This document shows, in pieces, positions 6,240 to 55,198 of a stretch of 64,000 bases of DNA. This DNA comes from Felis catus (taxonomy: Eukaryota), in contig NC_058376.1 of NCBI RefSeq assembly GCF_018350175.1, positions 14,694,001 through 14,758,000 of the forward strand, read 5' to 3'. The translations under genes and the position numbers were made by a program. The notes below the pieces were generated by a model that did no database searches, was not told where the DNA came from, and saw only the letters and a list, made by a program, of their open reading frames with translations. How positions within the stretch are numbered: position 1 is the first letter of the stretch; each line of letters opens with the position of its first letter.

Positions 6240-6692
6240 TCAGTAAGCTGACCTAAAAAAGCGAGAGCTAAAAGCTGGTTGGTTACAAGTTGACTGGCAA
6301 CTCCTGGAAGAAAAAAAAGTTGGACTATAGAAGCTGGACCCACAGCCCAGAGATTGGAAACCAGTGCTCCCATAACCAAAAGACCCAAGGCCAATGTTTC
6401 CACATCCCAGAGATCCAGTGTAATTTGTTTGGCAGGGTCCGAAGAAGATGGAATTGTTTGGACGGAAGCAGGATGTCTGGTAGGATCTGGCCCCGGTACA
6501 GGATGTCCAGCAGCTGGTGGGCTCACAGTAGGTCTCCTGGCAGCCACCAAAGAGAGAGGAGCCCAGCTGGCGGGTGCTGGGAGAGTAGACTGCATTGCTG
6601 GGGTAGAAAGAGTCATAGGTGGAAACGGGGTGCCCCAGGTAACCTCCAAGAGAGCTGGAGGAGAAGCTTCCAGAACTGCGGTTGTAGTGCAT
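6240..6692 (-). CDS. KRTAP15-1: Keratin-associated protein 15-1 (PMG2 ortholog), 150 aa, single exon
   Basis: Motifs PVSTYDSFYPSNAVYSP, CQETYCEPTSC, ARSYQTSC, GSLGCGNIGLGS and GFQSLGCGSSFY match KAP15-1 as recalled. TATA about 75 nt upstream, Kozak aacATG. Confidence 0.92.
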   Translation of the reverse strand: MHYNRSSGSFSSSSLGGYLGHPVSTYDSFYPSNAVYSPSTRQLGSSLFGGCQETYCEPTSCWTSCTGARSYQTSCFRPNNSIFFGPCQTNYTGSLGCGNIGLGSFGYGSTGFQSLGCGSSFYSPTFFSSRSCQSTCNQPAFSSRFFRSAY

Positions 6693-9217: not shown

Positions 9218-9346
9218 NNNNNNNNNNNNNNNNNNNNNNNNNNNNNNNNNNNNNNNNNNNNNNNNNNNNNNNNNNNNNNNNNNNNNNNNNNNNNNNNNNN
9301 NNNNNNNNNNNNNNNNNNNNNNNNNNNNNNNNNNNNNNNNNNNNNN
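9218..9346. other. Assembly gap (129 N)
   Basis: N run covering the tail of the adjacent SINE. Confidence 1.
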
Positions 9347-10207: not shown

Positions 10208-10711
10208 ATGTCCCACAACTGCTGCTCTGGAAACATCTCCTCTCAGTCCCTTGGGGGACTGCGCTACCCAGGATCTTCCTGTGGATCTCTCTACCCCAAC
10301 AACCTGTTCTTCAGCACTAATCTCCGCTCTCCCAGCAGGTGCCAGCTGGGCTCCTCTCTCTACAGTGGCTGTCAGGAGACCTGCTGTGACCCCACCGGCT
10401 TCCGGACATCCTACCTGGTGTCCAGCCCCTGCCAGACGTCCTGCTACCGACCAAGGACCTCCACGTTCTACAGTCCCTGCCAGACAACGTATTCTGGGTC
10501 TCTGGACTTTGGCTCCAATGGCTTTCAATCTTTTGGTTATGGCTCTCCCTTTCTGGGCTTTGGATCCAGTGGTTTCCAATCAATGGGGTGTGGTCCCAAT
10601 GCTTTTTCATCCCTGAGTTGTAGATCGAGCTTTTATCGTCCAATGTCCTTCTCTTCTAGAAGTTGCCAGTCTGCTTTTTACCAACCAACCTGTGGATCTG
10701 ACTTCTACTAA
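10208..10711 (+). CDS. KRTAP14: Keratin-associated protein 14-like (PMG1 ortholog), 167 aa, single exon
   Basis: C-terminal half [27 protein letters not shown]...[27 protein letters not shown] closely follows mouse Krtap14 as recalled. Sits head-to-head with KRTAP15-1. caccATG start. Confidence 0.8.
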
Positions 10712-14436: not shown

Positions 14437-15759
14437 AAATAGTTCAACCCGGAAGCTAAAATCATTGGTTGTTGCCTCAGGAATAATAAAAAATACAAAT
14501 ATGGTGAAGGGCAACATCATGGCAAAGATGGGTAAGATTCCTGTGGAGAAGCAATAGTTGTAAGTACTGTAAACAAATGACTCCTAATTGTATCCAAAAA
14601 AGCTTCAGTATCCTGCTAATCAAACTGGAAGCAGTAGTTTAAAAGCTTTAAAAGCAGTCACATATGTACGCACAGCAGGTTAGTTCGGCAATCAATGCTT
14701 TTCTTCACCTCATCTGTAACCTCTGTTGTATTATTAATTATCTTTGTGCTTTTGTGTTGCTGGTTTTAAGGTTATTAGTACGTTATTTTTACATGACAAA
14801 GCACACACAAAGAATTTTCTTTTGTTTCTTGCTTGGGTTAAGTACTCTGCCATGCTGGATTCTAAATCTTTTTTTTTTTTTCCTACATCTATGCTATTTC
14901 TGCATCTATAATCCTAGTTTACTCTACTCAAGGACTTTCCCATGATTTTTCTCAGATTGCCTCCTTCAACCTGACTCACCAAGATGGGAATAGAATTTAC
15001 AGTACCTGGGAGATGTCACAAGAGTTTGGTGATTTTATTTTTTTTTAATTTCATAGAGAAGTTTCTAGGGGGTGACAGGATTTGTGTTGGGGAATTTGAA
15101 GGGAAGATAAGAAATCTGTCAAGTTGCATAAGAATTATCTTCCTCTTCTTGTTTATTTTATCTTTTTAATTTTCAACAAGAAGCTAATTATCTCCAGTTT
15201 TTAGCTGCTGGTATTGAACTTGAATATACCAAGTGAGATGTAAGGGAGCTTTATTTTTTTTGTTCTTTTTTAACTATTTAAGTGTTCATAGCATTGGGTA
15301 TTGAGGAAGGGAACATCATGATGTGACACTAATAATGGCAATTAAACTGAATTGTCATAGCACTCAGGATTTCTAGTGATATCTTCCTGAGAGGAAATCA
15401 AATATTTCTCTCTCAGTGTATCATTAGGTATTATAGTTAATACACATATTTTTAAAAGAAATTAGCTCATCCTTCCTACAGGTTCTTCTTCTAAACTCTA
15501 AATTTATTTTCAGTTTTACTCTTTATTATGCATATCGCTCATGAGGCTAATGAAACAAAATGCCATAGGAGTTGAAGGCTATTCATATAAAACAATTTCT
15601 GTAGCACAAGAAATTGCTACAGATTCTGTAGCACAAGAAATTGGTACTCTGGTGAAATAAGGGGTTGCATATTTTTAAAAAAATCAGAAAAGAACAATAA
15701 AAGAGCTTCAGGAGATCAAATTCTGCTAGATCTTTGATTTATACACTTCGGCAAGCTTC

Positions 15760-15850
15760 TAATCCTTTGGAGTTTTTATTCCCTTATCTCTGGAAAGGTC
15801 TATAAGACAATGTTTATCTTTCTCACAGGGATGTTTGAACATTAAATGGA
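15760..15850 (+). mobile_element. MIR fragment
   Basis: ggcaagcttctaatcctttggagtttttattcccttatctctg...ctcacagggatgtt resembles the MIR core. Confidence 0.5.
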
Positions 15851-15949
15851 AGTGGTATATCTGATACCTCTCGCATCCTCCGTTATATCCTCATTCTCTC
15901 GCTCAGATCTGGGCACAGATATGGTGAACAATTTCATGCAGACTTCAAC

Positions 15950-16410
15950 CCTCTTTGCCCAGACAGGTCCTCCCCTGCCAAACACAGCACATCTTTCGTT
16001 CTTGACCTGGGCTTCTCTGAGGTTACAGCCAGGAAAACAAATGGAGCTCACGGTGAATCTTTCTTTGCACAATGAATAAAGTTCTAGGAAGTTAACATAC
16101 ATCTGGGACAATCTCGAACCAATGGTAGAGATGGGAGCTATTGAATACATGCTTCCACCTATCGATCAGATCCCGGCATAGACAATTCCAAGAGTCATTG
16201 TATACATTTCTGAAAAGCCCCAGGAAGATTGGGTCCCCACTGCCCACTGTAACAACAACTAAAAATATGTCCCTTAATGAGATTTTCCTCTCTGATTCTT
16301 TCACCTTCCATGATCTCCCCAACCTGCTCCCTGGGATCTTGTGCCAAGTAAACCACCTGCACCCAGTTTTCTGACTTCAGATTATTTTGGGGAGACAGAG
16401 ATTGAAGTTA
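15950..16410 (+). mobile_element. Degenerate ERVL LTR (LTR16/LTR33-like)
   Basis: 3' end aagtaaaccacctgcacccagtttt...ttggggagacagaga resembles LTR16/33 termini. Confidence 0.4.
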
Positions 16411-17087
16411 AGCCTCATAAACATAAATGCTTGTTCAACATTGCTTGGGTGTGTTTCTCTTTGCCTGATTCAGGTTGAACCTTGGAGAAGCATTAGGAGG
16501 TTATCCACACTTCCTTAACCCAGTTACTACCCATCTAAGATCACTGTGAATCTTACACATGTTTATAGGCAAGGTTCGGGAACACTTCCCCTGTGGCAGG
16601 CAGAGACCCTGGCACTTATGCTAACCAACAGAGAGCATATATAGCACCTGACCTGGGAGCTCATTTTTTTTTTTTCTGCTGAAAATCCACACTCAGATTC
16701 TAGACTTTGAGGTATGTGTCTGACGATGTGTAGCCTCACCTTATAAATTATATCGTATTCTTGTTGTCTGCATTTCTAGTTTATGTACCAATTTCTTTGT
16801 GTTCCTTTATCAGCAAAAACGCATGTCCTTTATTCTCAGGCAAATGTCACTGACAGTGAGACATGTACAATATAGACCTCCAGGAAATGACTACCCCCAA
16901 CAGGAAACATATCCAATGTCAACAGAAATGTGCTCAAATCTATCATGTGGTAAGTTCACAAACTTGGTTTCAGAGTCATATTGATATTCATCTAAATCTC
17001 CCAAATCCATAAAATACAAACAACTACAAGCAAATAATAATAATAAAAAGAAGATGAACAATATATTTGAGTGCCGGATTACATACA

Positions 17088-17093
17088 TTTATT
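17088..17093 (-). terminator. Candidate polyA signal of the KAP13 gene at 17325-17810
   Basis: tttatt about 230 nt past the stop. Confidence 0.55.
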
Positions 17094-17324
17094 AGATTAA
17101 AATTTTCATTTTCAATTGCATTTCAATGAAGCATATATTCAATCAATAGTACAGAATTTAGAACTTAATTTGAGAATACGCATTAAGTTCAGAGTCAGCC
17201 AGAAGTCGATGATGCAAGAAACTGATGATTTAGGAATAAAAGATTAGTAGTAATTGGTGGAAATGAAAATGGTGGCTGTGCCAAGTAGAGACTTTGACAT
17301 CAATTCTCAAAAGCATCTGGACCC

Positions 17325-17810
17325 TCAACAAGTTGATGTATAGAAGCCAGATTCACAGGTTGGCCTGTAACAGCTCCTCGAGGTAAAGTAGTTAGGGCGG
17401 CAGAATCTGGATCCATAAGCCAGCAGAGGGAAGCAATGGACTCTATAACCCAGGGGTCTGAAGCCCTGGGATCCATAGCCCAGTGAGTAGCAGCTTCTGG
17501 ACCCAAAGCCCACAGACCCAGGGTAAGCAGTCCAGCAGGGGCTGCAGAACGTGGAGGTCCTCGGGAGGGAGCAGGACGTCTGGCAGGGGCTGGACACCAC
17601 ACAGGACGTCCGGCAGCTGGTGGGCTCACAGCAGGTCTCCTGACAGCTGCTGTAGAGGGAGGTGCCCAGCTGGCAGGTGCTGGGAGAGCAGAGGTCAGTG
17701 CGGTAGACCAGGTTGCTGGGGTAGGAAGAGCCACAGGAGAAGCTTGGGTAGCGCAGGTAGCCCCCAAGGGAGCGGGAGGAGAAGTTTCCAGAGCAGCAGC
17801 TGTAGGACAT
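17325..17810 (-). CDS. KRTAP13: KAP13-family protein, copy A, 161 aa (positionally and C-terminally KRTAP13-4-like). True start is the internal ATG at 17810.
   Basis: [22 protein letters not shown]...CQETCCEPTSC...RPTCESGFYTSTC. TATATAAA at 17888-17895. The ORF-track ATG at 17888 lies in the TATA box. Confidence 0.9.
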   Translation of the reverse strand: MSYSCCSGNFSSRSLGGYLRYPSFSCGSSYPSNLVYRTDLCSPSTCQLGTSLYSSCQETCCEPTSCRTSCVVSSPCQTSCSLPRTSTFCSPCWTAYPGSVGFGSRSCYSLGYGSQGFRPLGYRVHCFPLLAYGSRFCRPNYFTSRSCYRPTCESGFYTSTC

Positions 17811-18113
17811 GTTGAAGGGAGATGTGAGTTCAGCTGAGTTACGGTGAGAAGACTCTGAGGTTGAATGTCGCCTCCTAGACTGGGGCATTTATATACCCTC
17901 AGCAGCAGGTGTGGTGGCCTGCATGGTCATCCTTTACGTATTTGTGCGTCTTCATTTACATATGTGTAACTCAGAAATCTCTGTAATTGCAGTTGGATAG
18001 TCTCCCACATCTTGTATTTATGGGTGCTATAATTTTGGTGTTACAGCCAAAGCCAATGAACTGCTCCTAGGTCAGAAATACCGTGACTGTATGACATTAA
18101 TGATCATCCCATC
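17439..18113 (-). repeat. Left arm of 675-bp inverted repeat (partner 22376-23050)
   Basis: Hand alignment: 1 difference in 303 nt of promoter/5'UTR and about 6 in 372 nt of CDS. Confidence 0.95.
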
Positions 18114-19570
18114 ATGATGAGGAAAGCACCAGAGCCAGGAGAGGAAAAGGCTTGTGCTTCCTGCATCTGCTTCTTGTGTATCAACATCTGGTTTTGTTGA
18201 TGGATGCCTCCCTCCTAAGAGTGGGGAATGAGATCACATCAATTTTTTTTTTCTGGTGCATGGATCGGAGGCACAGTTTCTACCTAGATGGAGCCTTCCT
18301 TGAAAGATCCCCCTTGTCAGCATTCATTCCCATGCTCCAGAATTACTTGGTGGTAATTCGTTATGCCAACAGTGGAGAGAGATGCACCAAGCACTAGTTA
18401 CCCACCGCGTCTCTTGTCCAATGAAGAGAGACAAAAGACGTAAAACAAAGACCGAGAGAAATGACCGGACATTGATGGACACCTTGCCACATACCTAAGG
18501 ATAGGGTGACAACAAAAGGGCGCGGTTGAAACAACCCGGGGAGGATCAATCTAAGTCCATCTCCGGGCAGTCAAGAAAAACACACCACTATGGTGAGGGC
18601 AGGGAACAGCGGAAAGAGAACCATATAAGCTTAGGGAGTTTAACCTTTTTTCTAGCGCATTCTTAAATGATGATCTGTTACACCCTGATGTCTTTATACT
18701 CAAAAAATTTCAACAGTAGTGTACCTTATGAATTTTGGTGTGCTATCCTTTTTTATCATCTTCATTTATAAATATCCAGGTCTTCTACCATCTCAGAATG
18801 TCTTAGCTTTTTACGGCACAGGGTTTGAATGTTATTTTGGTAGTTGCACAGCCAGGTACCTCCCTACGTTTTCTTGCCTAAATGTTTCTTTTCAGTCCCT
18901 TTTCCTCAGGGTACATGAATCTCTCTCTCTTTCTCTCTGTCTCTGTCTCTGTCCCTCTCTGTCTTCAACTCAATCTGTGCCCCCACCACTTTCCACTCTT
19001 GTTTTTTTCTGTGTTAAGTTTGATTACCTCCTTTTTCTTTCTTGTTTTGTTCTTTTTTGCCATTGTTGAACTAGAAATTGAAAGTGTTTTTTAAGTTTGA
19101 TAATCTATCGTATTCTTAGAGTATAACCAACTGCTTTCTAAGTTCCATGTTAAAATAATGTCAGTTAAAAAATAAATAAATAAAATGAAACCAGTGAAAT
19201 AATGTTTTAGACCTGGGAGAATGTAGTATCATGGTTGATGTCAATATTTTCTTATTTTACTTTCTAATAAAACTCTAATACACTCACAACGGTAATGATA
19301 ACAACTATTGAATTTTCTCAATAATTTGTACCCATTTTAAAAGCAGCATCATCTAGACCTTCTAGAAGGAAGAGGACTGAGTAGAGAAGTAAATGACCTC
19401 AATTCAAACAGCTACTTGGTGAGTCCTTGATTTTCCGTCCTTCAAAATTGGAATTTCTCCTTGCTCTGTGCGTCAGCAAATGGGCAAAGTATCCTATTGA
19501 TACAGTACTGTGGGTACTATTACTTCCCAATTTTTTCTGCTTTTAAACATAACTCTTTAAAATTATCTTA

Positions 19571-19885
19571 ATGTTGGTCAAAGAATGCAAGGTTTTAGTT
19601 ATGTGCGATGAATACATTCTGAGAATCTAATGTACAACATGGTAGCTATAGTTACTAATAATACAAATACCATGTTAATATAGTTAAAATTTGCTAAGAA
19701 AGATATTCTCAAGTGTTTTAACCACATGCACAAAAATTGTAACCATGTGGGATGGCAAAAAATCAAAAATTGTTTGATTTTGATAATCATTCACAATGTA
19801 GATTTATATCTAAATATCACATCATACACCTTAAATACATATAACTTATTTGTCTCTTGTACTTCAGTAAAGCTGGAAAAAAGCA
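19571..19885 (+). mobile_element. L1MA-type 3' end
   Basis: aatctaatgtacaacatggtagctatagtt...tttgctaag...cacatcatacaccttaaata...cagtaaagctggaaaaaa. Confidence 0.85.
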
Positions 19886-20964
19886 AAATAATCTTGAATA
19901 TAAAACTTGTGGATTAAAAGGGAGCATAGATGTATTAGGCAAATTGCAAAAGTTAATGAATTTGTCTTCAATTACTCTTGGTTCCTTGTTCAAGTATCCT
20001 TCTTAACACGAGGTATTCTTCTCATCCTTTTGCATCTAAATCTCTAAATCTTCATCCACATTAAGTTAATATAATTTTCAGAAAGATTTGTCAATTCCCC
20101 AACCTTGGGCTAATTCCTTAACCTTGGACCCAGAGATTATATTATTTGTTTTATATAGCATAGACTTCCACATTTTTTTGAACTGATTTATTTATCAACA
20201 ATTAAAAATTGTGATACTTCACATAAAATTTATCACTCGGGGCTGTACCTGTAGTGGCTTCTGATCTGCAACGCAGTGTAAAGTGTGTGTACGTGGTATG
20301 GAAATTGCAGACAGAGTTGGAAAGAAAGGCTGAACGCCCACAATGGTAGCATTTGAATCTCCTGGATTTGGTAGGTGTCGTCTACTACCATTGAAACTAC
20401 TATAACACGACTTTTAAATGGTCACCTTCACTGTAGCAACTCACTTATTTGAATCATTCCTAAGTATTGTTAAAATAAAAATTTTCAAAATTACATATAA
20501 TTAGCAAGTTAATGTTGCTTAAAATACTGAAACTTTTCTCTCAATGAGAATAGAAAATACCTAAGTATGCCAGAGTCCCAGAGGTACTCTATGGGCCAGA
20601 ACTAAGTCAAAAGAAATGAACCTACATCTGGAGTTGCCATTCGCTTAAAATTGTATGTTGATTTTGAAAGTACTGACTGAGAGGCTAAGAGAATTCCATA
20701 AACTCACTGGGCTTAAGAAATAATATTGGAATTCAGCATCTACCAGAGTTGAGGTCATGTCAAATATCCCAGACCTTGGAGAGCCAATTCCTAGAAGTAA
20801 AATTGAATTGTTAATAAACAGCTTTTTCATACAGACTGAAGCCCAGGTTTGAACCATCTCAACCACTGATTGGATTAAAACGACCCAGGGTGCTGTGACC
20901 TTATCCTAGAAGCCTGCCTGAAGCATAAGTCAATTCTTTCTGGAAAAGGGTACATCATTCTGGG

Positions 20965-20965
<1 letters not shown>

Positions 20966-21007
<42 letters not shown>
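20966..21007. repeat. (TG)n microsatellite
   Basis: Directly visible. Confidence 0.98.
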
Positions 21008-21010
<3 letters not shown>

Positions 21011-21147
21011 CACAAATATATATCTATTAACCTCTCAAAATATTGTGGGAATATGAGAAGAAAAGACAAACAAAAGAGAACACCAGAAAACACAATCTGA
21101 AATACATGGTCCACATTTCAAAATCAAACATTAAAATAATTACGTGA

Positions 21148-21371
21148 GGGGCGCCTGGGTGGCGCAGTCGGTTAAGCGTCCGACTTCAGCCAGGTCACGA
21201 TCTCGCGGTCCGTGAGTTCGAGCCCCGCGTCAGGCTCTGGGCTGATGGCTCGGAGCCTGGAGCCTGTTTCCGATTCTGTGTCTCCCTCTCTCTCTGCCCC
21301 TCCCCTGTTCATCCTCTGTCTCTCTCTGTCCCAAAAATAAATAAACGTTGAAAAAAAATTAAAAAAAAAAT
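21148..21371 (+). mobile_element. SINEC_Fc, young
   Basis: Perfect 15-bp TSD aaaataattacgtga at 21133-21147 and 21372-21386. CpGs intact. Confidence 0.97.
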
Positions 21372-22375
21372 AAAATAATTACGTGAAGAAGAATTTAACA
21401 ATAGGAAATAGGAAGGTATTATTAAGAAATGATTACGTTTAAAGAAGTAAATGTAAGATTGAGAATTTTGGCAGAAAAGTAAAAGCCACACAACAGAACC
21501 TCATTGAAATATTGGAAATTTACAATATATCTGATTTATAAAACTTAACTGATATGTTTTATCAGGAGAGGGAACAAAGCGGAACAGAAAATGAATGAAT
21601 TGGGAGATGGGGTAGAAAGAAATTCCCAAGCTAAAGCATAAAGTCATAAAAAGAATGAAAACAGAGAAAAGAGTCTAAGAGGCATATGTAACATAGGTTA
21701 ATAGTGTACTTTGCTCATAACTGGAATCAGAGACATCCCGTGTGTCCCAGGACCTAGTTTCTCTAATATCTCTGCTGTATCATAGCACAATGGGGCCCTT
21801 AGTCAACTAAGCCTCCTGCAGTTGAGGATCTGAGAAGGAAATTCTCAGGGCTGATACACGTATGGATGAGAATCTATTAGGACTACAGGCTTCATATCAG
21901 ATATATTGAATCTAAAACCCAATTATTTTCTTCCCTCATTTAAATATTGCTTAGTCCTTTGATTCTCCTCCTAAAGGCCCCCACTGATCTCCACTTGCAA
22001 TTCTGCTTTGGTACTGTCCCTCACTGTAGCCATGTCTCCAAATAAATGTCCAGGCTTCTCTCTGTGCCTTTAACAGTCAATGATCGGCTGGCATCTTTTC
22101 CCCCTTCCATTGGATCTGAGACATATTGTGTAAGAGAATGTGGATATAGATGGACAATAATTTTGGAAAATGAGAAAACATGGTGACAAGTAAGGTCAGT
22201 ATTTACTATGTTCCTACTAAAGCCAAAACTATGCCTCTGATCAATTGACAAAGAAGGAAAATAGTTATATTTTATTTCCTACCATTTGAGAAAAGTATGT
22301 GCCCATTATTGCCGGAAACAAAATACCTGACGATTCTGATTCTGACAAGAGGAAAGGAAAGGCTTTCCTGGCTTA

Positions 22376-22678
22376 GATGGGATGATCATTAATGTCATAC
22401 AGTCACGGTATTTCTGACCTAGGAGCAGTTCATTGGCTTTGGCTGTAACACCAAAATTATAGCACCCATAAATACAAGATGTGGGAGACTATCCAACTGC
22501 AATTACAGAGATTTCTGAGTTACACATATGTAAATGAAGACGCACAAATACGTAAAGGATGACCATGCAGGCCACCACACCTGCTGCTGAGGGTATATAA
22601 ATGCCCCAGTCTAGGAGGTGACATTCAACCTCAGAGTCTTCTCACCGTAACTCAGCTGAACTCACATCTCCCTTCAAC
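22376..22678 (+). promoter_or_regulatory. KAP13 promoter and 5'UTR: HOXC13-type CCCATAAA (22465-22472), octamer-like ATGTAAAT (22528-22535), CACACC box, TATATAAA (22594-22601), CTCAGCTGAACTC leader
   Basis: Motifs occur at conserved positions in the other KAP13 copies. Confidence 0.7.
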
Positions 22679-23050
22679 ATGTCCTACAGCTGCTGCTCTG
22701 GAAACTTCTCCTCCCGCTCCCTTGGGGGCTACCTGCGCTACCCAAGCTTCTCCTGTGGCTCTTCCTACCCCAGCAACCTGGTCTACCGCACTGACCTCTG
22801 CTCTCCCAGCACCTGCCAGCTGGGCTCCTCCCTCTACAGCGGCTGTCAGGAGACCTGCTGTGAGCCCACCAGCTGCCAGACGTCCTGCGTGGTGTCCAGC
22901 CCCTGCCAGACGTCCTGCTCCCTCCCGAGGACCTCCACGTTCTGCAGCCCCTGCTGGACTGCTTACCCTGGGTCTGTGGGCTTTGGGTCCAGAAGCTGCT
23001 ACTCACTGGGCTATGGATCCCAGGGCTTCAGGCCTCTGGGTTATAGAGTC
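22376..23050 (+). repeat. Right arm of 675-bp inverted repeat
   Basis: Reverse complement of 17439-18113. Confidence 0.95.
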
Positions 23051-23162
23051 TGTGGTTTCCCTTCCCTGAGCTATGGATCCAGTTTCTGTCGCCAATCTAT
23101 TTTCCTTTGAGAAGTTTCCATCCATCTTGTAATGCGCACTCTGTAGATCTGGCTTCTACTGA
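22679..23162 (+). pseudogene. KRTAP13: KAP13-family copy B (KRTAP13-3-like C-terminus). Frameshifted: a 143-aa ORF ends at 23110, ancestral stop at 23160-23162.
   Basis: Near-identical to copy A for 124 codons. Two separate 1-bp deletions (about 23093 and about 23135) disrupt the restorable tail CRPIYFPLRSFHPSC...CRSGFY*. May still make a truncated protein. Confidence 0.8.
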
Positions 23163-23422
23163 TTAGTGTGTCAAAGAGCCAAATCCATTTGAAACAGGCA
23201 GATTCTGTGATGAGATTATCTATTGTCTTAATTTTCTCCATTTGAAAGCATCTAATATTCCCTGATTGCCACCAACTTTACCTTGCCTGCTCTCAAACAC
23301 CGGCTGATAGAAGAACCCTGTCAGACTACAAGATTAATTAGTAATTCAAATTGCATTGTTGATAGAATTTATGGTTTTGCATTTCTCTCAAAAATAGAAG
23401 AAAAGTCAAATGATTTTATTTT

Positions 23423-23428
23423 AATAAA
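23423..23428 (+). terminator. Candidate polyA signal of copy B
   Basis: AATAAA followed by a T-rich tract. Confidence 0.5.
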
Positions 23429-24785
23429 CTCTTTTTTCTGCGGTCCAAATCTGCTGTCAATGTTGTTATTTCTTAGTGATGTGTCAAGTAGGAATCGTGT
23501 TATCATTACTGCTGGTAATGGCCGTTGGAAATCTCAGATTTTAAAGGCTGTGCGCTAATTTTGGTTGGGCTTGGGTATTTTCTCCTGTTGAAGCAGGACT
23601 TCCTTGGATGCCAACAGTTTCTAGGTACCGCCTTTTTCTCAATGATATCTCAAGAGATTTGAATGTCTTGTTCAGACAATAAATATAGACCATGCATAAA
23701 AAGACATCATAGAGACATTATGCATCAGAGAAATTTGAAGAATGTGTGAACAAAATTTAGATTTACATGATGAGGCTGTGCATGCAGGTTATTCAAATGA
23801 AAGACTAGGGTGTGGGTGTAAAATTTCAGAAAAGAGCGCCTATGAGCTTTAGCTAATCACAGTGAAGGTATGTCACATATTTTTTTTAATTGACTAAATC
23901 CCTGTTCTCCAATTACTGTTTTCAATCTGCTCAAATTATCTCCATTTGTATAAGAACAACTTAGATGGGAACAAACCTAGCTGAGAAGGAACTAGGCTCA
24001 GCAGGTGTGAACTTGCACCTGGGTTCTTTGCCAACATACACAGTGAATCTAACTCTATACATGAAACCTTTATTATCATTGAAAATGATTGTTTCCGCTG
24101 TATATTGAAATGAAATGAGATATTCTTTATTTGTACCAGATTCCCTCCTACATCCAAGTGTTATAAATGTAAGGTGCTAACATGTAACATAGATACTAAC
24201 TATGTAGTAGATAACACAGACAGCATAACATACTATCATAGACAGCACGATAGCAACCAGAGACGTTATATTCATACAGAACAAGCAATGTTTAAATATT
24301 TTTTTTCCTATTTTTATTTGATATGGTCTTCAAACATGTCAAAATTAGGAAATGGATTGCAGGGTACTCGAAGCTTGGAAAACACCCAGTCTGCTAAGTT
24401 GATCTCAGTATATTTCACCATGCTCTATTTACTTCCTCCTTTCCTACCTACATAATAAAATCTGAATGTAAAAGGAGTTGTCAGGTTCATCACATTCAAC
24501 CTACTTACTCTATAGAGGAGGAAACTGAGAGAAGAGCCAGATAGAATTTTACTAGATGACACAGCAGATTATTGTAGACTTATTAGTAGAATTGCTTTAT
24601 TCCATGCATTCTCTCAGATCCTGTCTTCCCTTATATGCTCCCTCTCTTCCTCATCTTCTCCCCTCCTCCCCCATCATGTTTAGGAAATAGTCATGACACT
24701 TACATGGCTAGAGGAACACATAAAGGCATAATGAAAGAAGATTTGGGGGAACAAATTCATCGTCCGTCGCGTTATAAAATTTAAA

Positions 24786-24830
24786 ATCAGCAAACTCCTC
24801 TGTAAACGGTCCTGCTAGTGAATTTTAACG
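24786..24830 (+). mobile_element. MER58-like 5' fragment
   Basis: cagcaaactcctctgtaaacggtcctgctagtgaatttt resembles the MER58A end. Confidence 0.4.
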
Positions 24831-25031
24831 ATCCAAGTTGTTATCATGCCCATAATCTTCAACCAAGAGAAAGAATCCAATTTTTACCCCAAAACATAAG
24901 CAAGGGCATAGCAGTCATGGGGAGCAGACAAAACTTTTTTGGCCAAGCTGAGGCCAAATGTCTCCTCTGTTAATGGCTCCAGATTTTAGATGTAGTAGTG
25001 GAAATTTTTCTGGTTTTCAGAAATATACTAG

Positions 25032-25528
25032 TGTCTTAGTTTTTCTGTTATTGCCAAAGCAAACTATATCAAATTCGTGGAATAAACAATACTCATTTAT
25101 TATCTTATAGTCCCATAGGTGAGAAGTCAGGTACAATCTCACTGGGCTAAAATCACTATGCTGGCAGAGACGCATTCCTTTCCAGAGGCTCTATGGGAAT
25201 ATCTACTTTCTTGCCATTTTCAGTTTCTGGTGGCCAGATGCATTCCTTAGCCCATTTTCTCCTTCCTCCGTCTTCAGATACAGCAATGAGGGTCAAGTCG
25301 ATGTTACTCTGCCTCACTCCCACCTACTCTTCTGCCTCTCTCTTCTATTTTTCAGGATGCTTAAGATTATGTCATGCTTATCTGGCAATGTCCCTATTTT
25401 AAGGTCAACTGATTAGCAACTTTAATTTCATCTGCTACCTTACTAACCTTTTCCACATCAAGTAACATATCCACAAATTCCAAGATTTAGAATATGGGTG
25501 TATTTGAGGAACTGTTATTCTACCTACA
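25032..25528 (-). mobile_element. MLT1-family (ERVL-MaLR) solo LTR
   Basis: tgtcttagtttt...ctcactgggctaaaatc...gaggctctatgggaat...aaggtcaactgattagcaact...ctacctaca. Confidence 0.88.
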
Positions 25529-25573
25529 AACATTAATAAACAAGCAAATTTATATATTTAAAAAAAAACCCTT

Positions 25574-25784
25574 GGGGGGCCTGGGTGGCTCAGTCGTTGA
25601 GTGACCAACTTCAGCTCAGGTCACGATCTCATGGTTTGTGGGTTCGAGTCCCGCATCGGACTCTGTGCTGACAGCTCGGAGCCTGGAGCCTGCTTCGGAT
25701 TCTGTGTCTCCCTCTATGTCTGCCCCTCCTAGCTTGTGCTCTGTGTCTCTCTATCTCAAAAATAAATAAACACTTAAAAAAAAA
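25574..25784 (+). mobile_element. SINEC
   Basis: Full body with A tail. Confidence 0.94.
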
Positions 25785-26169
25785 CCTCAAAGACTGATTG
25801 TGAATAGATAGCAATATTATGAAGTGCTCAAAAAGAGCAAAATTCAATGGTGAGGATAGCAAACTTGCAACACCACAATTACACTTGAAGTTATAACAAT
25901 ATCCCATTTCACGCTGATAGCCAAGGTAAGAAACCTGTAATATTCTACAAGAAACATAACTCCTGAGTTGATGTCTTGCCATGACCATTCAGGAAACTAC
26001 CCCCTTCTCTATTCCATGTCTCTGGCACATACTAAATTTCCCAGAGCACAGACTCTTCTTTCTATACTTCCGTAGAGTATAGTGAATCGTGATCTTCCAG
26101 TTCTCACCAAGTTAATCCTACTGCACATAATGGACAGAGACCAGCTGGCACTTATCTGGCTTCCTCCTG

Positions 26170-32145: not shown

Positions 32146-32278
32146 NNNNNNNNNNNNNNNNNNNNNNNNNNNNNNNNNNNNNNNNNNNNNNNNNNNNNNN
32201 NNNNNNNNNNNNNNNNNNNNNNNNNNNNNNNNNNNNNNNNNNNNNNNNNNNNNNNNNNNNNNNNNNNNNNNNNNNNNN
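32146..32278. other. Assembly gap (133 N)
   Basis: N run. Confidence 1.
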
Positions 32279-39160: not shown

Positions 39161-39601
39161 TCAACAAGTTAATCTGTAGAAGCCAGATCCATAGATTGGT
39201 TTGTAGCATAATGGCTGGAGATGCCGAAAACCAAAATAGGTTGGGTGGCAGAATGTGGATCCATAGCTCAAGGTGGGGAAGCCACAGACTCCATAACCCT
39301 GGGGTCTGAAGCCTCTGGGCCCAGCATAAGTCATCCAGCAGGGACTGCAGAGTGTGGAGGTCCTTGGGCGGGAGCAGGACATCTGGCAGGGGCTGGACAC
39401 CACGCAGGACGTCCGGCAGCTGGTGGGTTCACGGCAGGTCTCCTGACAGCTGCTGTAGAGAGAGGATCCCAGCTGGCAGGGGCTGGGAGAGCAGAGGTCA
39501 GTGCGGTAGACCAGGTTGCTGGGGTAGAAAGAACTTGGGTACCGCAGGTAACCCCCAAGGGAGCGGGAGGAGAAGCTTCCGGAGCAGCAGCTGAAGCCCA
39601 T
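39161..39601 (-). CDS. KRTAP13: KAP13-family protein, copy D, 146 aa, with two in-frame internal deletions
   Basis: MGFSCCSGSFSSRSLGGYLRYPSSFYPSNLVYRTDLCSP...GSGFYRLTC. ATG 39601 has strong Kozak (aacATGG), with a weak in-frame ATG 6 nt upstream. TATA at 39699-39706. Confidence 0.85.
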   Translation of the reverse strand: MGFSCCSGSFSSRSLGGYLRYPSSFYPSNLVYRTDLCSPSPCQLGSSLYSSCQETCREPTSCRTSCVVSSPCQMSCSRPRTSTLCSPCWMTYAGPRGFRPQGYGVCGFPTLSYGSTFCHPTYFGFRHLQPLCYKPIYGSGFYRLTC

Positions 39602-40049
39602 GTTCATAGGAGATGTGAGTTCAGCTGAGAAAACACAGAGAATCCTGAATTCACACTGAGAATATTCTGAGGTCTATTCTACCTCCCGGACGGTGGCATT
39701 TATATACTCTCAGCTGCAGGTGTCGAAAGTGACAAGGGCATCATCCCTATGTTTGTACTCCTTCATTTGCATAGTATTAACTCAATCATCTTCTCTGTAA
39801 TTGCAGCTGCGTAGTTTCGCACCTACTGCATTTATGAGGACTATAATAAATTTTGTTATAACACAAAGCCAATGAACTATTCTTATGTCAGAAATGTTAT
39901 GACCGTTTTGCATTAATGGCCATGTCATCTTGGCCGAGAATGCCCCTCCTTTTCTTCCTGGTATATGCTGTACCTGTATCTGATTCTGGTTTGGCTGGGG
40001 TATGAGTTCCTTCTAAGGGTGGAGATTAAAATGACATCACCTTTCTCTC

Positions 40050-43415: not shown

Positions 43416-43908
43416 TTAGTAGAAGTCAAATAGATAGATAGGTTGAAAATGAGATGGCTGGAGGCTACTAGAAGCAAAATGTAGTGGCAGAAACTGGGTC
43501 TATAGCTCAGGAAGGAGAAATCATGGACTCCATAACCTAAGGGTCTGAAACCACTGGATCCATAGTCCAGTGAATGGCTGCTCCTAAATCCATAACCCAG
43601 AAAGAAGTCATTGCTGGACCCAAAGTCCATAGATATGGGATAAGTTGACTGGCAGGAACTGCAGAGCGGAGCAGGATGTCTGGCAGGGGCTGGACTCCAT
43701 GCAGGATGTCTGGCAGCTGTTGGGCTCACAGCAGGTGTCCTGACAGCTACTGCAGAGAGAAGAGCACTGCCTATATTCTGGGAGAGCAGAGGTCAGTGCT
43801 GTAGACCAGATCATTGGAGTAGGAAGAGCCACAGGAGGAACCTGGGTAGCTCAGGTAGGCCCCAAGGGAGGGGGAGGAGAAGTTTCCAGAGCAGCAGTTG
43901 TGACTCAT
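43416..43908 (-). pseudogene. KAP13-family pseudogene
   Basis: [43 protein letters not shown], then a 2-bp deletion with TAG at 43771-43773, a 17-bp deletion near 43668 and a further frameshift near the end. Restorable tail ...FDFY* at 43416. TATA-like tataaaa near 43960. Confidence 0.9.
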
Positions 43909-44728
43909 GTTGAGAGTTGAGAAAATTCTGAGGTTTAAGGTGATCTTGTGCACTGGGTATTTTATACTTATCAATTGGCATGGCAGAGTCAGAGTATAGG
44001 TACAATCTTCTTATATCATCTGTATACCCTCTTCTGCATTTGTGTAAATCATCAATCTTCTCTGTCATTGCACTTGACTAGACTCGTACCTATTGTACTT
44101 GTGGGTGCTATAACTTGTGATTATAACACAAAGCCAATAATCATTCCTATCTTAGAAATTCCAGAACTATTTTTCAGCGATCCTCAACCTGTTACAGCCA
44201 GGAAAGTTCCTTCTCTCCCTGGCTATGACTGCATGTATATCTATTCTTGCTTCGCTCCGGGATTTTTGCTGTCACTTTTCTACTGTGCCAAGTGATAAGT
44301 GACATAGATTTATTTTTTATAAGGATGCTTCTAATGATTGATTCTACTTGTCACCACTGATTTACATTCTCCAAATTTATTCTCCATCTATCACATACTC
44401 CATCTATCACATATTATTATACAGAACTTCTTACATCCAATGGAGGGAAGAAAAATAACACATAATGAGAAGTGGCTAGAAATAGGAAGGAGCCAGGCAA
44501 ACATTTAAAGGCAAAGGGACTCAAAAAGACTGACTCGAGACGGTGTCACAAGAAGAGATTGACTCAGGCCATTAGAAGAGGGAGCAGGAGTGATGGTGAC
44601 AATGTGGGAATCTGGGAAAAAGGAAAAGACAGGGATTTTAGGTACCTCTTCTACCTACTTTTAGTCTATGGAGATCTTTTCATCTAAATGCCATTTAAAA
44701 CAAATAATATCTAATGTATTTTCACATT

Positions 44729-48573: not shown

Positions 48574-49101
48574 TTAACAAGTGGATGTATAGAATCCAGA
48601 TCCACAGGTTGGTCTGTAACATGATGACTGACAGCTCCTGGAGGAGAAGTAGGTTGGGCGGCAGAAACTGGATCCATAGCTCAGGGAAGGCAAACCACAG
48701 ACTCCATAACCCAGGGGTCTGAAGCCACTGGATCCACAGCCCAGAGAGTAGCAGCTTCTGGATCCACGGCCCAGGGAATGGCAGCTTCTGGATCCACAGT
48801 CCACAGACCCAGGGTAAGCAGTCCAGCAGGGACTGCAGAACGTGGAGGTCCTCGGGAGGGAGCAGGACGTCTGGCAGGGGCTGGACACCACGCAGGAAGT
48901 CCGGCAGCTGGTGGGCTCACAGCAGGTCTCCTGACAGCCGCTGTAGAGGGAGGAGCCCAGCTGGCAGGTGCTGGGAGAGCAGAGGTCAGTGCGGTAGACC
49001 AGGTTGCTGGGGTAGGAAGAGCCACAGGAGAAGCTTGGGTAGCGCAGGTAGCCCCCAAGGGAGCGGGAAGAGAAGTTTCCAGAGCAGCAGCTGTAGGGCA
49101 T
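48574..49101 (-). CDS. KRTAP13: KAP13-family protein, copy C, 175 aa (KRTAP13-1/13-2-like, two decapeptide repeats). True start is the ATG at 49101.
   Basis: [12 protein letters not shown]...GSRSCHSLGR-GSRSCYSLGC-GSSGF...RPTCGSGFYTSTC. TATA at 49179-49186 contains the ORF-track ATG. Confidence 0.92.
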   Translation of the reverse strand: MPYSCCSGNFSSRSLGGYLRYPSFSCGSSYPSNLVYRTDLCSPSTCQLGSSLYSGCQETCCEPTSCRTSCVVSSPCQTSCSLPRTSTFCSPCWTAYPGSVDCGSRSCHSLGRGSRSCYSLGCGSSGFRPLGYGVCGLPSLSYGSSFCRPTYFSSRSCQSSCYRPTCGSGFYTSTC

Positions 49102-50129
49102 GTTGGCAGGAGATGTGAGTTCAGCTGAGTTACAGTGAGAAGGTTCTGAGTTTAAATGTCGCCTCCTAGACTGGGGCATTTATATACTGTCAACCATGGG
49201 TGTGGCATTTTTTACAGTCACCTTTCCCACACTTGGAATCTCTCATTTTCCTATATGTACATCAGTGATATTTTCTCTAATTGCAGATGATTCCTTCCGT
49301 CTCATATTTGTGGGAGAATTCATCGTGATGTAGCACCAAGCCAACGAACCATCCCAATGTCAGAAATGCTATGACTGTATGTCATTAATGCCAACTAATC
49401 ACGACCAGGAAACCCCCTACTCTTCTCCTTGGCTGAGACTCGTTGTGCCTTTTGCCTGTACATTGGCTGGGGAATGCTTAGCTCTAAAGGCAGGGATTGA
49501 GATGAACCTCAGTGGAATAGAGGCACCTTATTTGTCACCAATGATTTTCTTTCTATAAATGTATTTCATTGCCTAAAATTAATTCTTATACATTACATTA
49601 CCTTATATATATACCTCTCAAATCCATTGGAAAGGGGAAAATAGATACGATAAATTGATTGAGAAATATGATGGGTCACAGAGAGAAATCGGGACAAGTG
49701 TTTAAAGGCAAAATGACTAAGCAAGATTAATTTGGGACAAAAATCTCAGTGGAGACCAATTTGTACACGTGTGAAGAAACTCAGAGTCAAATACTCTTGA
49801 GGTGAAGGAAGGTAACTAGTGACACTATGGGTCTTTCCATCTGTGTGTAATTTCAATAAAAACAAGTTCTGTATTAATATAGTTTATGGCTTTTCATATA
49901 CACATTGTCCCTTTTGTCACCTGTAGTTACAATGTGTCCAGTAATCCTGCTCTCCTAGGAGAGTCTTATTACACAATACTTTCTGGTCATTTTTATCTTT
50001 AGGTTCTTATCTTACGATTATCTCCTTCATTGTAAAAACATTTTTCCCTACTTTAGTTTTCTTTAAGATTATTTTTCCATTGTAAAATATCCAAATATTT
50101 TCTTTTATAGAGTTCTCCACATCAGGCAA

Positions 50130-54712: not shown

Positions 54713-55198
54713 TCAGTAGAAGCCAGATCTACACATTGGTTTGTAGCAAGAAGACTGGTAGGCCCTAGAAGTCAAGAAAGATGGGTGACAGAACTGAGAT
54801 CCATAGCTCATGGAAGGGAAACCTTGGACTCTGCAAGCCATGGGTCGGAAGCCACTGGATCCACAGCCCAGAGAATAGCAGCTTCTGGACCCAAAGCTGG
54901 CAGACCCAGAATAAGTTGTCTGGCAGGGACTGCAAAACGTGGAGGTCCTCGGGAGGGAGTAGGACGTCTGGCAGGGGCTGGACACCATGCAGGACGTCTG
55001 GCAGCTGGTGGGCTCACAGCAGGTCTCCTGACAGCCGCTGTAGAGGGAGGAGCCCAGCTGGCAGGTGCTGGGAGAGCAGAGGTCAGTACGGTAGACCAGG
55101 TTGCTGGGGGAAGAAGAGCCACAGGAGGAGCTTGGGTAGCACAGGTAGCCCCCAAGGGACTGGGAGGCGACGTTTCCAGAACAGCAGCTGTAGGACAT
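54713..55198 (-). CDS. KRTAP13: KAP13-family protein, copy E, 161 aa
   Basis: MSYSCCSGNVASQSLGGYLCYPSSSCGSS...SSCYKPMCRSGFY. TATA at 55271-55278, octamer ATGCAAAT at 55337-55344. Confidence 0.92.
   Translation of the reverse strand: MSYSCCSGNVASQSLGGYLCYPSSSCGSSSPSNLVYRTDLCSPSTCQLGSSLYSGCQETCCEPTSCQTSCMVSSPCQTSYSLPRTSTFCSPCQTTYSGSASFGSRSCYSLGCGSSGFRPMACRVQGFPSMSYGSQFCHPSFLTSRAYQSSCYKPMCRSGFY

What the first reader, a model, noticed from the sequence alone, without database searches (positions are those of the whole stretch)
17439..23050. 675-bp, ~99% identical inverted repeat: arm-to-arm gene conversion of promoter plus 5' CDS in a head-to-head KAP13 pair
Seen: 17439-18113 is the reverse complement of 22376-23050, with 1 difference in 303 nt of promoter/5'UTR and about 6 in 372 nt of CDS, around a 4,262-bp spacer. 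Both boundaries are abrupt. Outside them the flanks remain only distantly homologous (atc-atgatg-aggaaagc vs atc-taagcc-aggaaagc) and the C-termini differ strongly. Known: human has an old divergent KRTAP13-3/13-4 pair next to KRTAP15-1 (recalled), and KAP families show concerted evolution. Inference: these are old paralogs homogenised by recent conversion, not a new duplicate. The regulatory part is more identical than the coding part, so their proximal promoters are being kept the same. The arms could also mediate recurrent inversion of the spacer, swapping distal enhancers between the two genes.
Basis: partly seen in the sequence, partly recalled or inferred. Interest (0 to 1): 0.75.

Follow-up and report, generated by a model that had tools for sequence, protein, structure and literature searches.

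The report
Cat KAP13 gene pair, front halves repeatedly copied
Two old, head-to-head hair-protein (KAP13) genes in a cat genome keep their promoters and first three quarters almost identical by repeatedly copying one onto the other; their tails stay private, and this is a clean new example of a process already known in this gene family.

Summary
Window 17439-18113 is the reverse complement of 22376-23050: 675 nt, 7 mismatches (1 in 303 nt of promoter/5'UTR, 6 in 372 nt of CDS), 4,262-nt spacer, abrupt edges.

The arms are the front ends of two PMG/KAP13 genes: g3 (161 aa) and g4 (143 aa, cut short by two 1-bp deletions just past the tract).

Recurrent gene conversion between old paralogs is strongly supported:
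- Within the window, the tract puts g3 with g4, but the 3' CDS/UTR puts g3 with g6. dS is 0.03 in the tract and about 1.6 beyond it.
- Across carnivore proteins, the N-terminal part groups g3-type and g4-type by family (felids, hyena, dog, mustelids, seals, bears), including shared family-specific deletions.
- The C-terminal part splits cleanly by gene. AU tests reject the opposite groupings.
- Within Felidae, lineage-specific residues shared by both genes point to at least three separate events.

Not supported: "promoter more identical than CDS" (Fisher p=0.14; four of the seven differences are CpG transitions).

Untested: inversion of the spacer.

Gene conversion in KAP families is published, so this is a new member of a known kind. 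The same scan noted many other conversion mosaics elsewhere in this genome.

The parts
17439..18113 (-). Arm A: conversion tract on gene g3 (303 nt promoter/5'UTR plus CDS codons 1-124)
   Evidence: 675 nt, 7 mismatches to the reverse complement of arm B
22376..23050 (+). Arm B: conversion tract on gene g4 (303 nt promoter/5'UTR plus CDS codons 1-124)
17325..17810 (-). g3: intact KAP13-type single-exon ORF, 161 aa plus stop; private tail from codon 125
   Evidence: PF05287, E 1.4e-48; 96% to a Neofelis KAP13-1-like protein; tail orthologous to Hyaena P0008
22679..23162 (+). g4: KAP13-type gene. The open frame ends at 23110 (143 aa). The ancestral frame runs to the stop at 23160-23162 through two 1-bp deletions near 23090-23093 and 23135-23138.
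   Evidence: Read in frames 0/2/1 with X at the breaks, the tail matches the intact 177-aa Hyaena protein P0019. The same 143-aa ORF is annotated in at least 11 other felid species; the two Lynx copies are 133 aa with the same tail.
17888..17895 (-). TATA box of g3, 85 nt upstream of the ATG, inside arm A
   Evidence: sequence read directly
22594..22601 (+). TATA box of g4, 85 nt upstream of the ATG, inside arm B
17088..17093 (-). AATAAA signal downstream of g3 (private 3'UTR)
23423..23428 (+). AATAAA signal downstream of g4 (private 3'UTR), at the position homologous to that of the paralogs
18114..22375 (.). Spacer between the arms, 4,262 nt and 37% GC. It has no convincing ORF. It holds a (TG)21 run at 20966-21008 and a young tRNA-derived carnivore SINE at 21148-21380 (+).
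18220..18345 (-). Old upstream homology block of g3 (-410 to -535), about 62% identical and collinear with the g4 block
   Evidence: z about 11 vs shuffles; reverse-complement control z 0.2
22158..22283 (+). Old upstream homology block of g4 (-396 to -521)
   Evidence: also 71% to 44276-44400, upstream of a KAP13 relic
48574..49101 (-). g6: third, weaker partner. Its 5' CDS is 95.7% identical to both arms, but its promoter only about 70%. Its tail is the closest relative of the g3 tail.

Best explanation
g3 and g4 are ancient KAP13 paralogs lying head to head. Their front ends (about 300 nt of proximal promoter and 5'UTR, plus codons 1-124) are repeatedly overwritten by one another through ectopic, non-reciprocal gene conversion during repair of DNA breaks.

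Shown:
- The tract is a mosaic inside older, diverged homology.
- The tails are orthologous by gene across carnivores, while the front parts group by lineage.
- The process has recurred in felids, hyena, dog, mustelids, seals and bears.

Inferred:
- The edges are set by loss of usable homology. Upstream, this is where strong paralog similarity ends at about -300. Downstream, identity drops to about 70% at codon 125 and indels follow. Heteroduplex cannot extend past such sequence, so the edge reinforces itself.
- In feliforms the edge lies about 10 codons further 5' than in caniforms. The cat's two edge differences (17454, 17457) may be the next step of that erosion.
- The last full homogenisation in the cat lineage was of the order of 1-5 million years ago. 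This rests on 1.04% arm divergence against 4.4% cat-tiger divergence over 10.8 My.
- g4 lost its reading frame in the felid stem, yet its promoter and first 124 codons stay intact, most simply because g3 keeps refreshing them.
For: Window evidence:
- Tract geometry and mismatch counts.
- Partitioned trees: promoter (g3,g4) 95/95; 5' CDS (g3,g4) 94/95; 3' CDS+UTR (g3,g6) 87/89, with g3-g4 only 58% identical.
- A Sawyer-type permutation gives g3-g4 a concordant run of 139 polymorphic sites, global p<0.0005.
- dS for g3-g4 is 0.034 in codons 1-124 and 1.58 beyond; for g3-g6 it is 0.073 versus 0.51.
- Old collinear homology lies upstream of the tract.

Cross-species proteins:
- The g4 tail, read through with X at the breaks, matches the intact Hyaena P0019 and the g4-type tails of dog, mink, seal, bears, rhino, horse and a bat.
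- The g3 tail matches Hyaena P0008 and the caniform g3-type tails.
- N-part tree: Felidae 95/94*, Hyaenidae 100/98*, Canidae 94/96, Mustelidae 99/96*, phocids 96/89*, Ursus 94/89. The family label needs 5 changes (the minimum) and the gene-type label 7.
- C-part tree: g3-type versus g4-type split 95/92*, type label 1 change, family label 10.
- AU tests: the N-part rejects g4 monophyly (p=1.4e-6); the C-part rejects a felid clade (p=0.003). Searches gave the same result on a broader paralog set.
- Family-specific deletions are shared by both gene types: 7 aa in bears, 4 aa in Hyaena.

Within Felidae:
- D53 is in both genes of Panthera pardus and P. onca.
- Y89 is in both genes of Neofelis.
- S24, S30 and L72 are in both genes of Prionailurus viverrinus but not in P. 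bengalensis g4.
Against: - The promoter part of the tract is therefore tested in the cat window alone.
- Rows for one search were chosen by their C-terminal motif, so the C-part split is partly circular. The groups tested by AU were named after the alignments had been seen.
- In three families the two gene types come from different species of that family.
- Within Felidae the N-part tree is an unresolved polytomy. The cat's g4 N-part is as close to Puma g4 (1 aa) as to the cat's own g3 (3 aa). A conversion specific to the cat lineage therefore rests on the 99% DNA identity and a rough clock.
- Neither the direction of transfer nor the mechanism that sets the edges was shown.
Confidence: 0.9

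Rival explanations
1. Recent inverted duplication: one gene's front end was newly duplicated and inserted, and the differences outside the arms arose afterwards or reflect unrelated flanking DNA.
For: The very high identity (99%) and sharp edges are what a young duplicate would also show.
Against: - Both flanks of both arms carry old homology: the 3' CDS/UTR and an upstream block.
- The g4 tail is orthologous to intact genes of hyena, dog, mink, seal, bears, rhino, horse and bat, and the g3 tail to a different set.
- Both mosaic genes exist in independent assemblies of many felids.
- A fragment that replaces a homologous stretch of an existing paralog is gene conversion by definition.
Confidence: 0.03
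2. Purifying selection alone: the front ends are simply under stronger constraint than the tails, with no sequence exchange.
For: All KAP13 paralogs conserve the N-terminal half better than the tail. The TATA region and the sequence around the start codon are conserved family-wide.
Against: - Constraint cannot give 302/303 identity in non-coding promoter, nor dS of 0.034 versus 1.58.
- It cannot make the two genes share family-specific substitutions and deletions, so that the N-part tree follows species families rather than genes (AU p=1.4e-6).
Confidence: 0.03
3. Assembly artefact: one arm is a mis-assembled copy of the other.
For: Near-identical inverted repeats are a known source of assembly error. 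The reads test could not be run.
Against: - Both the 161/164-aa and the 143-aa mosaic proteins are annotated in separate assemblies of Neofelis, Panthera onca, P. pardus and Prionailurus viverrinus, with neighbouring accession numbers.
- The arms carry 7 fixed differences and join different private flanks.
- 14 DNA-like runs from 6 studies hold 94-95% of the sampled words of 17300-23200. This last point does not separate the arms.
Confidence: 0.02
4. A single old conversion in the felid stem, followed by slow divergence, rather than ongoing exchange.
For: - The felid N-part tree is unresolved.
- The cat's arms differ at 3 residues, while cat g4 differs from Puma g4 at only 1.
Against: - Arm divergence of 1.04% (promoter 0.33%) is well below the 4.4% cat-tiger genome divergence over 10.8 My (PMC3778509).
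- Lineage-specific residues shared by both genes in Panthera, Neofelis and P. viverrinus need at least three separate events after the felid radiation.
Confidence: 0.1

Closest known systems
Concerted evolution of KRTAP1 genes by short-tract gene conversion (Zhou et al., bioRxiv 10.1101/282418)
   Same: The same superfamily of hair matrix genes. Paralogs older than the species compared. Lineage-specific residues shared between copies. Strikingly sharp borders between concerted and radiating sequence. Decapeptide-repeat copy-number changes inside the converted part.
   Different: [quoted passage not shown] The flanks, promoter included, radiate normally, and the four copies are tandem. Here the tract takes in about 300 nt of promoter and 5'UTR and stops inside the CDS at codon 124. 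That leaves a private tail and 3'UTR. The two genes are inverted, head to head.
Family-wide gene conversion in high-sulfur KAPs (Wu et al. 2008, PMC2528016; Khan et al. 2014, PMC4180150)
   Same: GENECONV/RDP-type evidence for frequent conversion and high GC in high-cysteine KAP subfamilies. KRTAP13 is listed with 4-16 copies per species and many pseudogenes.
   Different: Those surveys work on coding alignments. In the text I read they describe neither this pair, nor its promoter inclusion, nor its conserved 3' edge, nor the frameshifted partner.
Primate fetal globin pair HBG1/HBG2 (from my own knowledge, not checked here)
   Same: Conversion covers the promoter and the 5' part of the gene and ends at a fixed internal boundary. 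The 5' parts therefore group by species and the 3' parts by gene.
   Different: The globin genes are direct tandem duplicates and both are functional. Their boundary is tied to a simple repeat in an intron. No such element was seen at the KAP13 edges.
Functional gene / pseudogene conversion pairs such as CYP21A2/CYP21A1P (from my own knowledge)
   Same: A broken copy stays highly similar to its working neighbour through conversion, and could pass defects back.
   Different: Here the frame breaks lie outside the tract, so exchange within the tract cannot transfer them. No disease or phenotype is known.
Other conversion mosaics noted by this scan in the same genome (s1-805835 KRT37/KRT38; s1-811414 inverted KRAB-ZNF promoter/exon-1 block; s1-162429 OR10Q)
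   Same: Paralog pairs with near-identical blocks that include promoters or gene fronts, and private tails.
   Different: Different gene families. I did not check those notes.

Membership tests
PMG / KAP13-type high-sulfur keratin-associated protein genes (Pfam PF05287) | Protein matches the PMG profile above Pfam's gathering score | tested here: met
   g3 165.8 bits and g4 166.2 bits (cut-off 29). All seven ORFs of the window match.
PMG / KAP13-type high-sulfur keratin-associated protein genes (Pfam PF05287) | Closest relatives are annotated KRTAP13 proteins of related species | tested here: met
   412 hits at E<=1e-10. The best is 96% identical (Neofelis KAP13-1-like). Searches give the felid cluster members.
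PMG / KAP13-type high-sulfur keratin-associated protein genes (Pfam PF05287) | Single-exon gene with its own TATA box and polyadenylation signal | tested here: met
   uninterrupted ORFs, TATA at -85 in both arms, AATAAA at 17088-17093 and 23423-23428.
PMG / KAP13-type high-sulfur keratin-associated protein genes (Pfam PF05287) | Expression in the hair follicle | not testable with these tools
Interlocus (ectopic) gene conversion / concerted evolution | Sharply bounded high-identity tract embedded in older, diverged paralog homology | tested here: met
Interlocus (ectopic) gene conversion / concerted evolution | Tree of the tract conflicts with the tree of the flanks among paralogs | tested here: met
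   (g3,g4) in promoter and 5' CDS versus (g3,g6) in 3' CDS/UTR; permutation p<0.0005.
Interlocus (ectopic) gene conversion / concerted evolution | Across species the tract groups by lineage while the flanks group by gene | tested here: met
   Protein level only: (AU p=1.4e-6 and 0.003). Shared family-specific deletions.
Interlocus (ectopic) gene conversion / concerted evolution | Synonymous divergence is depressed in the tract | tested here: met
   dS 0.034 versus 1.58 (g3-g4) and 0.073 versus 0.51 (g3-g6)
Inversion polymorphism by recombination between inverted repeats | Inverted arms long and similar enough for homologous exchange | tested here: met
   675 nt at 99%, 4.26 kb apart
Inversion polymorphism by recombination between inverted repeats | Both spacer orientations seen in haplotypes or species | not testable with these tools
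Unprocessed pseudogene (for g4) | Frame-disrupting changes relative to intact orthologues | tested here: met
   Two 1-bp deletions relative to the intact Hyaena P0019 and other g4-type proteins
Unprocessed pseudogene (for g4) | Neutral evolution or loss of expression | tested here: inconclusive
   From the table I count about 4 replacements in the 19-aa private tail across the felid g4 rows. By my rough estimate that is near the neutral expectation. However, the 143-aa (133-aa in Lynx) ORF is open in every felid g4-type protein retrieved. No RNA data could be laid.

The most novel reading that the evidence does not exclude
The frameshifted partner g4 is not inert. One possibility is that the felid-specific 143-aa protein, which lacks the ancestral tail, is an expressed short KAP13 kept by selection for over 10 My. 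The other is that g4 is a dead gene whose promoter and first 124 codons are kept open only by conversion from g3, and which feeds its own unfiltered mutations back into g3. In addition, the 675-nt arms may flip the 4.3-kb spacer, so that cats are polymorphic for its orientation.
Probability: 0.3. Interest if true: 0.45.

Novelty: new member of a known kind. Interest (0 to 1): 0.3.

Why it matters
It gives a well-delimited natural case of gene conversion that includes a promoter and stops at an internal edge. That edge has held, to within about ten codons, since before cats and dogs split.

The case is useful for three reasons:
- It helps in studying what sets conversion boundaries.
- It warns against calling KAP13 orthologues from N-terminal or whole-protein trees.
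- It explains how a frameshifted copy can look like an intact gene in annotation.

It does not change the picture of KAP evolution, where conversion is already documented.

Tried and rejected
Tract and promoter trees at nucleotide level could not be built.
There is therefore no evidence from reads on arm presence, inversion or expression.
Later work on them was local alignment and scripts only.
- The look-up of sequencing runs shows that many runs of one organism hold the stretch, but this cannot tell the arms apart.
- A second look at the 90% protein cluster added only one new felid protein (P0135).
- Stringent local alignment of the upstream flanks found nothing for g3-g4 (z 1.5). Softer scoring did.
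- I considered a patch imported from g5, g6 or g7 as the source of the four clustered CDS differences. I rejected it because three of them are CpG transitions and one is private to g3.
- The donor of the shared promoter could not be identified. It is 74% identical to g5 and 70% to g6 and g7.
- Findings search by words gave nothing.
- The big representative-protein search, structure prediction and complex prediction were not needed.
Full report
**1. The observation.**
The repeat finder finds a single inverted pair in 15000-26000: 17396-18127 against 22362-23093, 732 nt at 97%. Window 17439-18113 is the reverse complement of 22376-23050, 675 nt with 7 mismatches.

One mismatch lies in the 303 nt upstream of the start codons (17870, position -60). 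Six lie in the 372 nt of CDS (positions 148, 163, 200, 210, 354, 357). The spacer is 4,262 nt.

**2. What the arms are.**
The window holds seven open KAP13-like genes (g1-g7) and at least one relic:

| Gene | Coordinates | Strand | Note |
|---|---|---|---|
| g1 | 6240-6692 | - | |
| g2 | 10208-10711 | + | |
| g3 | 17325-17810 | - | 161 aa |
| g4 | 22679-23110 | + | 143 aa |
| g5 | 39161-39607 | - | |
| g6 | 48574-49101 | - | |
| g7 | 54713-55198 | - | |
| relic | 43484-43908 | - | frame-broken |

All seven ORFs match Pfam PF05287 (PMG) far above its cut-off.

The best database relatives are felid "keratin-associated protein 13-1-like" proteins, up to 96% identical. Other notes of this scan call the genome cat.

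Each arm carries a TATA box 85 nt before its ATG. The arms are therefore proximal promoter, 5'UTR and codons 1-124 of g3 and g4, which face each other.

**3. g4 is cut short.**
Against its paralogs, g4 has two 1-bp deletions, near 23090-23093 and 23135-23138. The first is about 40 nt and the second about 85 nt past the tract.

Read in frames 0, 2 and 1 with X at the breaks, its tail runs to 23160-23162. It then matches the tail of an intact 177-aa Hyaena protein, P0019.

A g4-type ORF with the same short tail is annotated in thirteen other felid species: 143 aa in eleven and 133 aa in the two Lynx. They span both subfamilies. The first break therefore dates to the felid stem.

**4. Evidence inside the window.**
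- *Upstream homology.* Among g3-g7, BLAST-level homology ends between -290 and -330. The tract's upstream edge is thus where usable similarity stops. A weaker collinear block survives further out (18220-18345 vs 22158-22283, about 62% identity, z about 11).
- *Sliding identity*. g3-g4 is 98-100% from -288 to +323 and 94% over 323-373. It is 70% in the next 50 nt and 48-58% after that.
- *Partitioned trees*. These give (g3,g4) 95/95 for the promoter and 94/95 for the 5' CDS. For the 3' CDS plus 3'UTR they give (g3,g6) 87/89, where g3 and g4 are only 58% identical.
- *Permutation test*. A Sawyer-type test gives g3-g4 a concordant run of 139 polymorphic sites, global p<0.0005.
- *Synonymous divergence*. 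For g3-g4 it is 0.034 in codons 1-124 and 1.58 in the 19 comparable codons beyond. For g3-g6 it is 0.073 against 0.51.

The 5' CDS is also 95.7% identical between g3/g4 and g6, whose promoter is only about 70% identical. g6, some 26-31 kb away, is therefore a weaker third partner, in the CDS only.

**5. Evidence across species.**
I therefore used the annotated proteins returned. KAP genes are single exons, so these proteins are plain ORF translations.

*Two old gene types.* The C-terminal tails define two types. The g3-type is present in felids, Hyaena, dog, mustelid, seals, sea lion and bear. The g4-type is present in cat (read through with X), Hyaena, dog, mink, seal, polar bear and panda. 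It also occurs in a rhinoceros, a zebra and a fruit bat.

*N-terminal part* (columns up to cat codon 124). The two types group by family: Felidae 95/94*, Hyaenidae 100/98*, Canidae 94/96, Mustelidae 99/96*, the two phocids 96/89*, and Ursus 94/89. The family label needs 5 changes, the minimum possible, and the gene-type label needs 7.

*C-terminal part.* One branch (95/92*) separates all g3-type rows from all g4-type rows. The type label needs 1 change and the family label 10.

*AU tests.* These reject g4-type monophyly in the N-part (log-likelihood difference 184, p=1.4e-6). They also reject a felid clade in the C-part (p=0.003). A broader paralog set gave the same answer.

*Shared deletions.* Family-specific deletions are shared by both types: 7 residues in bears and 4 in Hyaena.

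*Caveats.*
- I picked rows by their tails, so the C-part split is partly circular.
- The AU groups were named after I had seen the alignments.
- In three families the two types come from different species.
- The promoter is untested outside the cat.

**6. Within Felidae.**
The N-part is too similar for a resolved tree. Single residues are informative:
- D53 occurs in both genes of Panthera pardus and P. onca, and in g4 of tiger and snow leopard. It is absent from Neofelis and the small cats.
- Y89 occurs in both genes of Neofelis.
- S24, S30 and L72 occur in both genes of Prionailurus viverrinus but not in P. bengalensis g4.

That requires at least three exchanges after the felid radiation.

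In the cat itself no residue is private to both arms. The case for a recent event rests on DNA identity. Arm divergence is 1.04%, against 4.4% between cat and tiger genomes that split about 10.8 My ago (PMC3778509). This gives roughly 2.5 My, with a Poisson range of about 1-5 My. The clock is rough.

**7. The seven differences**.
- Four are CpG transitions (-60, 163, 200, 210).
- One is private to g3 (148).
- Two are private to g4 and sit within 19 nt of the 3' edge (354, 357).

The contrast of 1/303 with 6/372 is not significant (Fisher p=0.137). The CDS part is 62% GC against 44% for the promoter part. The claim that the promoter is held more identical than the CDS, and hence that promoter identity is being selected, is not supported.

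**8. The edges.**
In felids and Hyaena the private part begins at codon 125. In dog, mustelids, seals and bears the two types stay alike for about ten codons more. I infer a homology-limited edge that creeps inward as mismatches build up next to it. The cat's two edge differences fit that picture. This is an inference, not a result.

**9. The spacer.**
It has no convincing ORF. It holds a (TG)21 run at 20966-21008 and a young tRNA-derived carnivore SINE at 21148-21380. That SINE is up to 96% identical to other copies in the window. These are good orientation landmarks.

Inversion between the arms is mechanistically plausible, but I could not test it. 

The look-up of sequencing runs showed 14 DNA-like runs from 6 studies holding 94-95% of the sampled words. 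This does not tell the arms apart. The argument against an assembly artefact is that both mosaic genes appear in independent assemblies of several felids.

**10. Comparison with what is known.**
Gene conversion and concerted evolution are documented for high-sulfur KAP families (PMC2528016; PMC4180150). [quoted passage not shown]

The present pair differs in three respects. The tract includes the promoter. It ends inside the CDS. The genes are inverted. I found no paper in the library describing this for KRTAP13.

The same scan has noted 39 conversion-type findings elsewhere in this genome, so the kind is common.

**11. Verdict.**
The main interpretation (old paralogs, recurrent conversion) is supported and extended to the whole order Carnivora. 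The promoter-selection inference is not supported, and inversion remains open. This is a new member of a known kind, of modest interest.

Noticed in passing
window 43484-43908 (-), with upstream match 44276-44400: An eighth KAP13-like locus. It is a relic whose matches to g6 and g7 lie in several frames. Its upstream region is 71% identical to the old upstream block of g4 (22134-22260).
   Followed up: partly
window 48574-49179 (-) and 17325-17888 (-): g6 and g3 share a similar 5'UTR (the upstream in-frame ORF extension reads alike) and a 5' CDS 95.7% identical. Their promoters beyond about -105 are only 50-76% alike. This looks like a second, CDS-limited conversion relationship across 31 kb.
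   Followed up: partly
window 22854-22919 and its mirror in arm A; g6 and Lynx/Hyaena proteins: A 30-nt (decapeptide) repeat inside the tract varies in copy number. g6 has one extra unit, the Lynx g4-type proteins lack one, Hyaena P0008 has one more, and Hyaena P0019 has two more. Repeat slippage accompanies the conversion.
   Followed up: no
proteins P0123 versus P0129/P0131/P0125: The lion g4-type protein is identical to that of Puma and lacks D53, which leopard, jaguar, tiger and snow leopard carry. This is either a reversal by conversion from another paralog or incomplete lineage sorting.
   Followed up: no
window 21148-21380 (+): A young carnivore tRNA-derived SINE with an apparent short target-site duplication. 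At least 20 related copies lie in the window, two of them 96% identical.
   Followed up: partly
window 9218-9346 and 32146-32278: Two runs of N (129 and 133 nt). They were left as they are.
   Followed up: no
proteins P0085 and P0072 (Equus): In equids a g4-type protein and a different paralog are identical over the second half of the N-part, then diverge at the same point before the tail. The 5'-restricted homogenisation may therefore extend beyond Carnivora.
   Followed up: no
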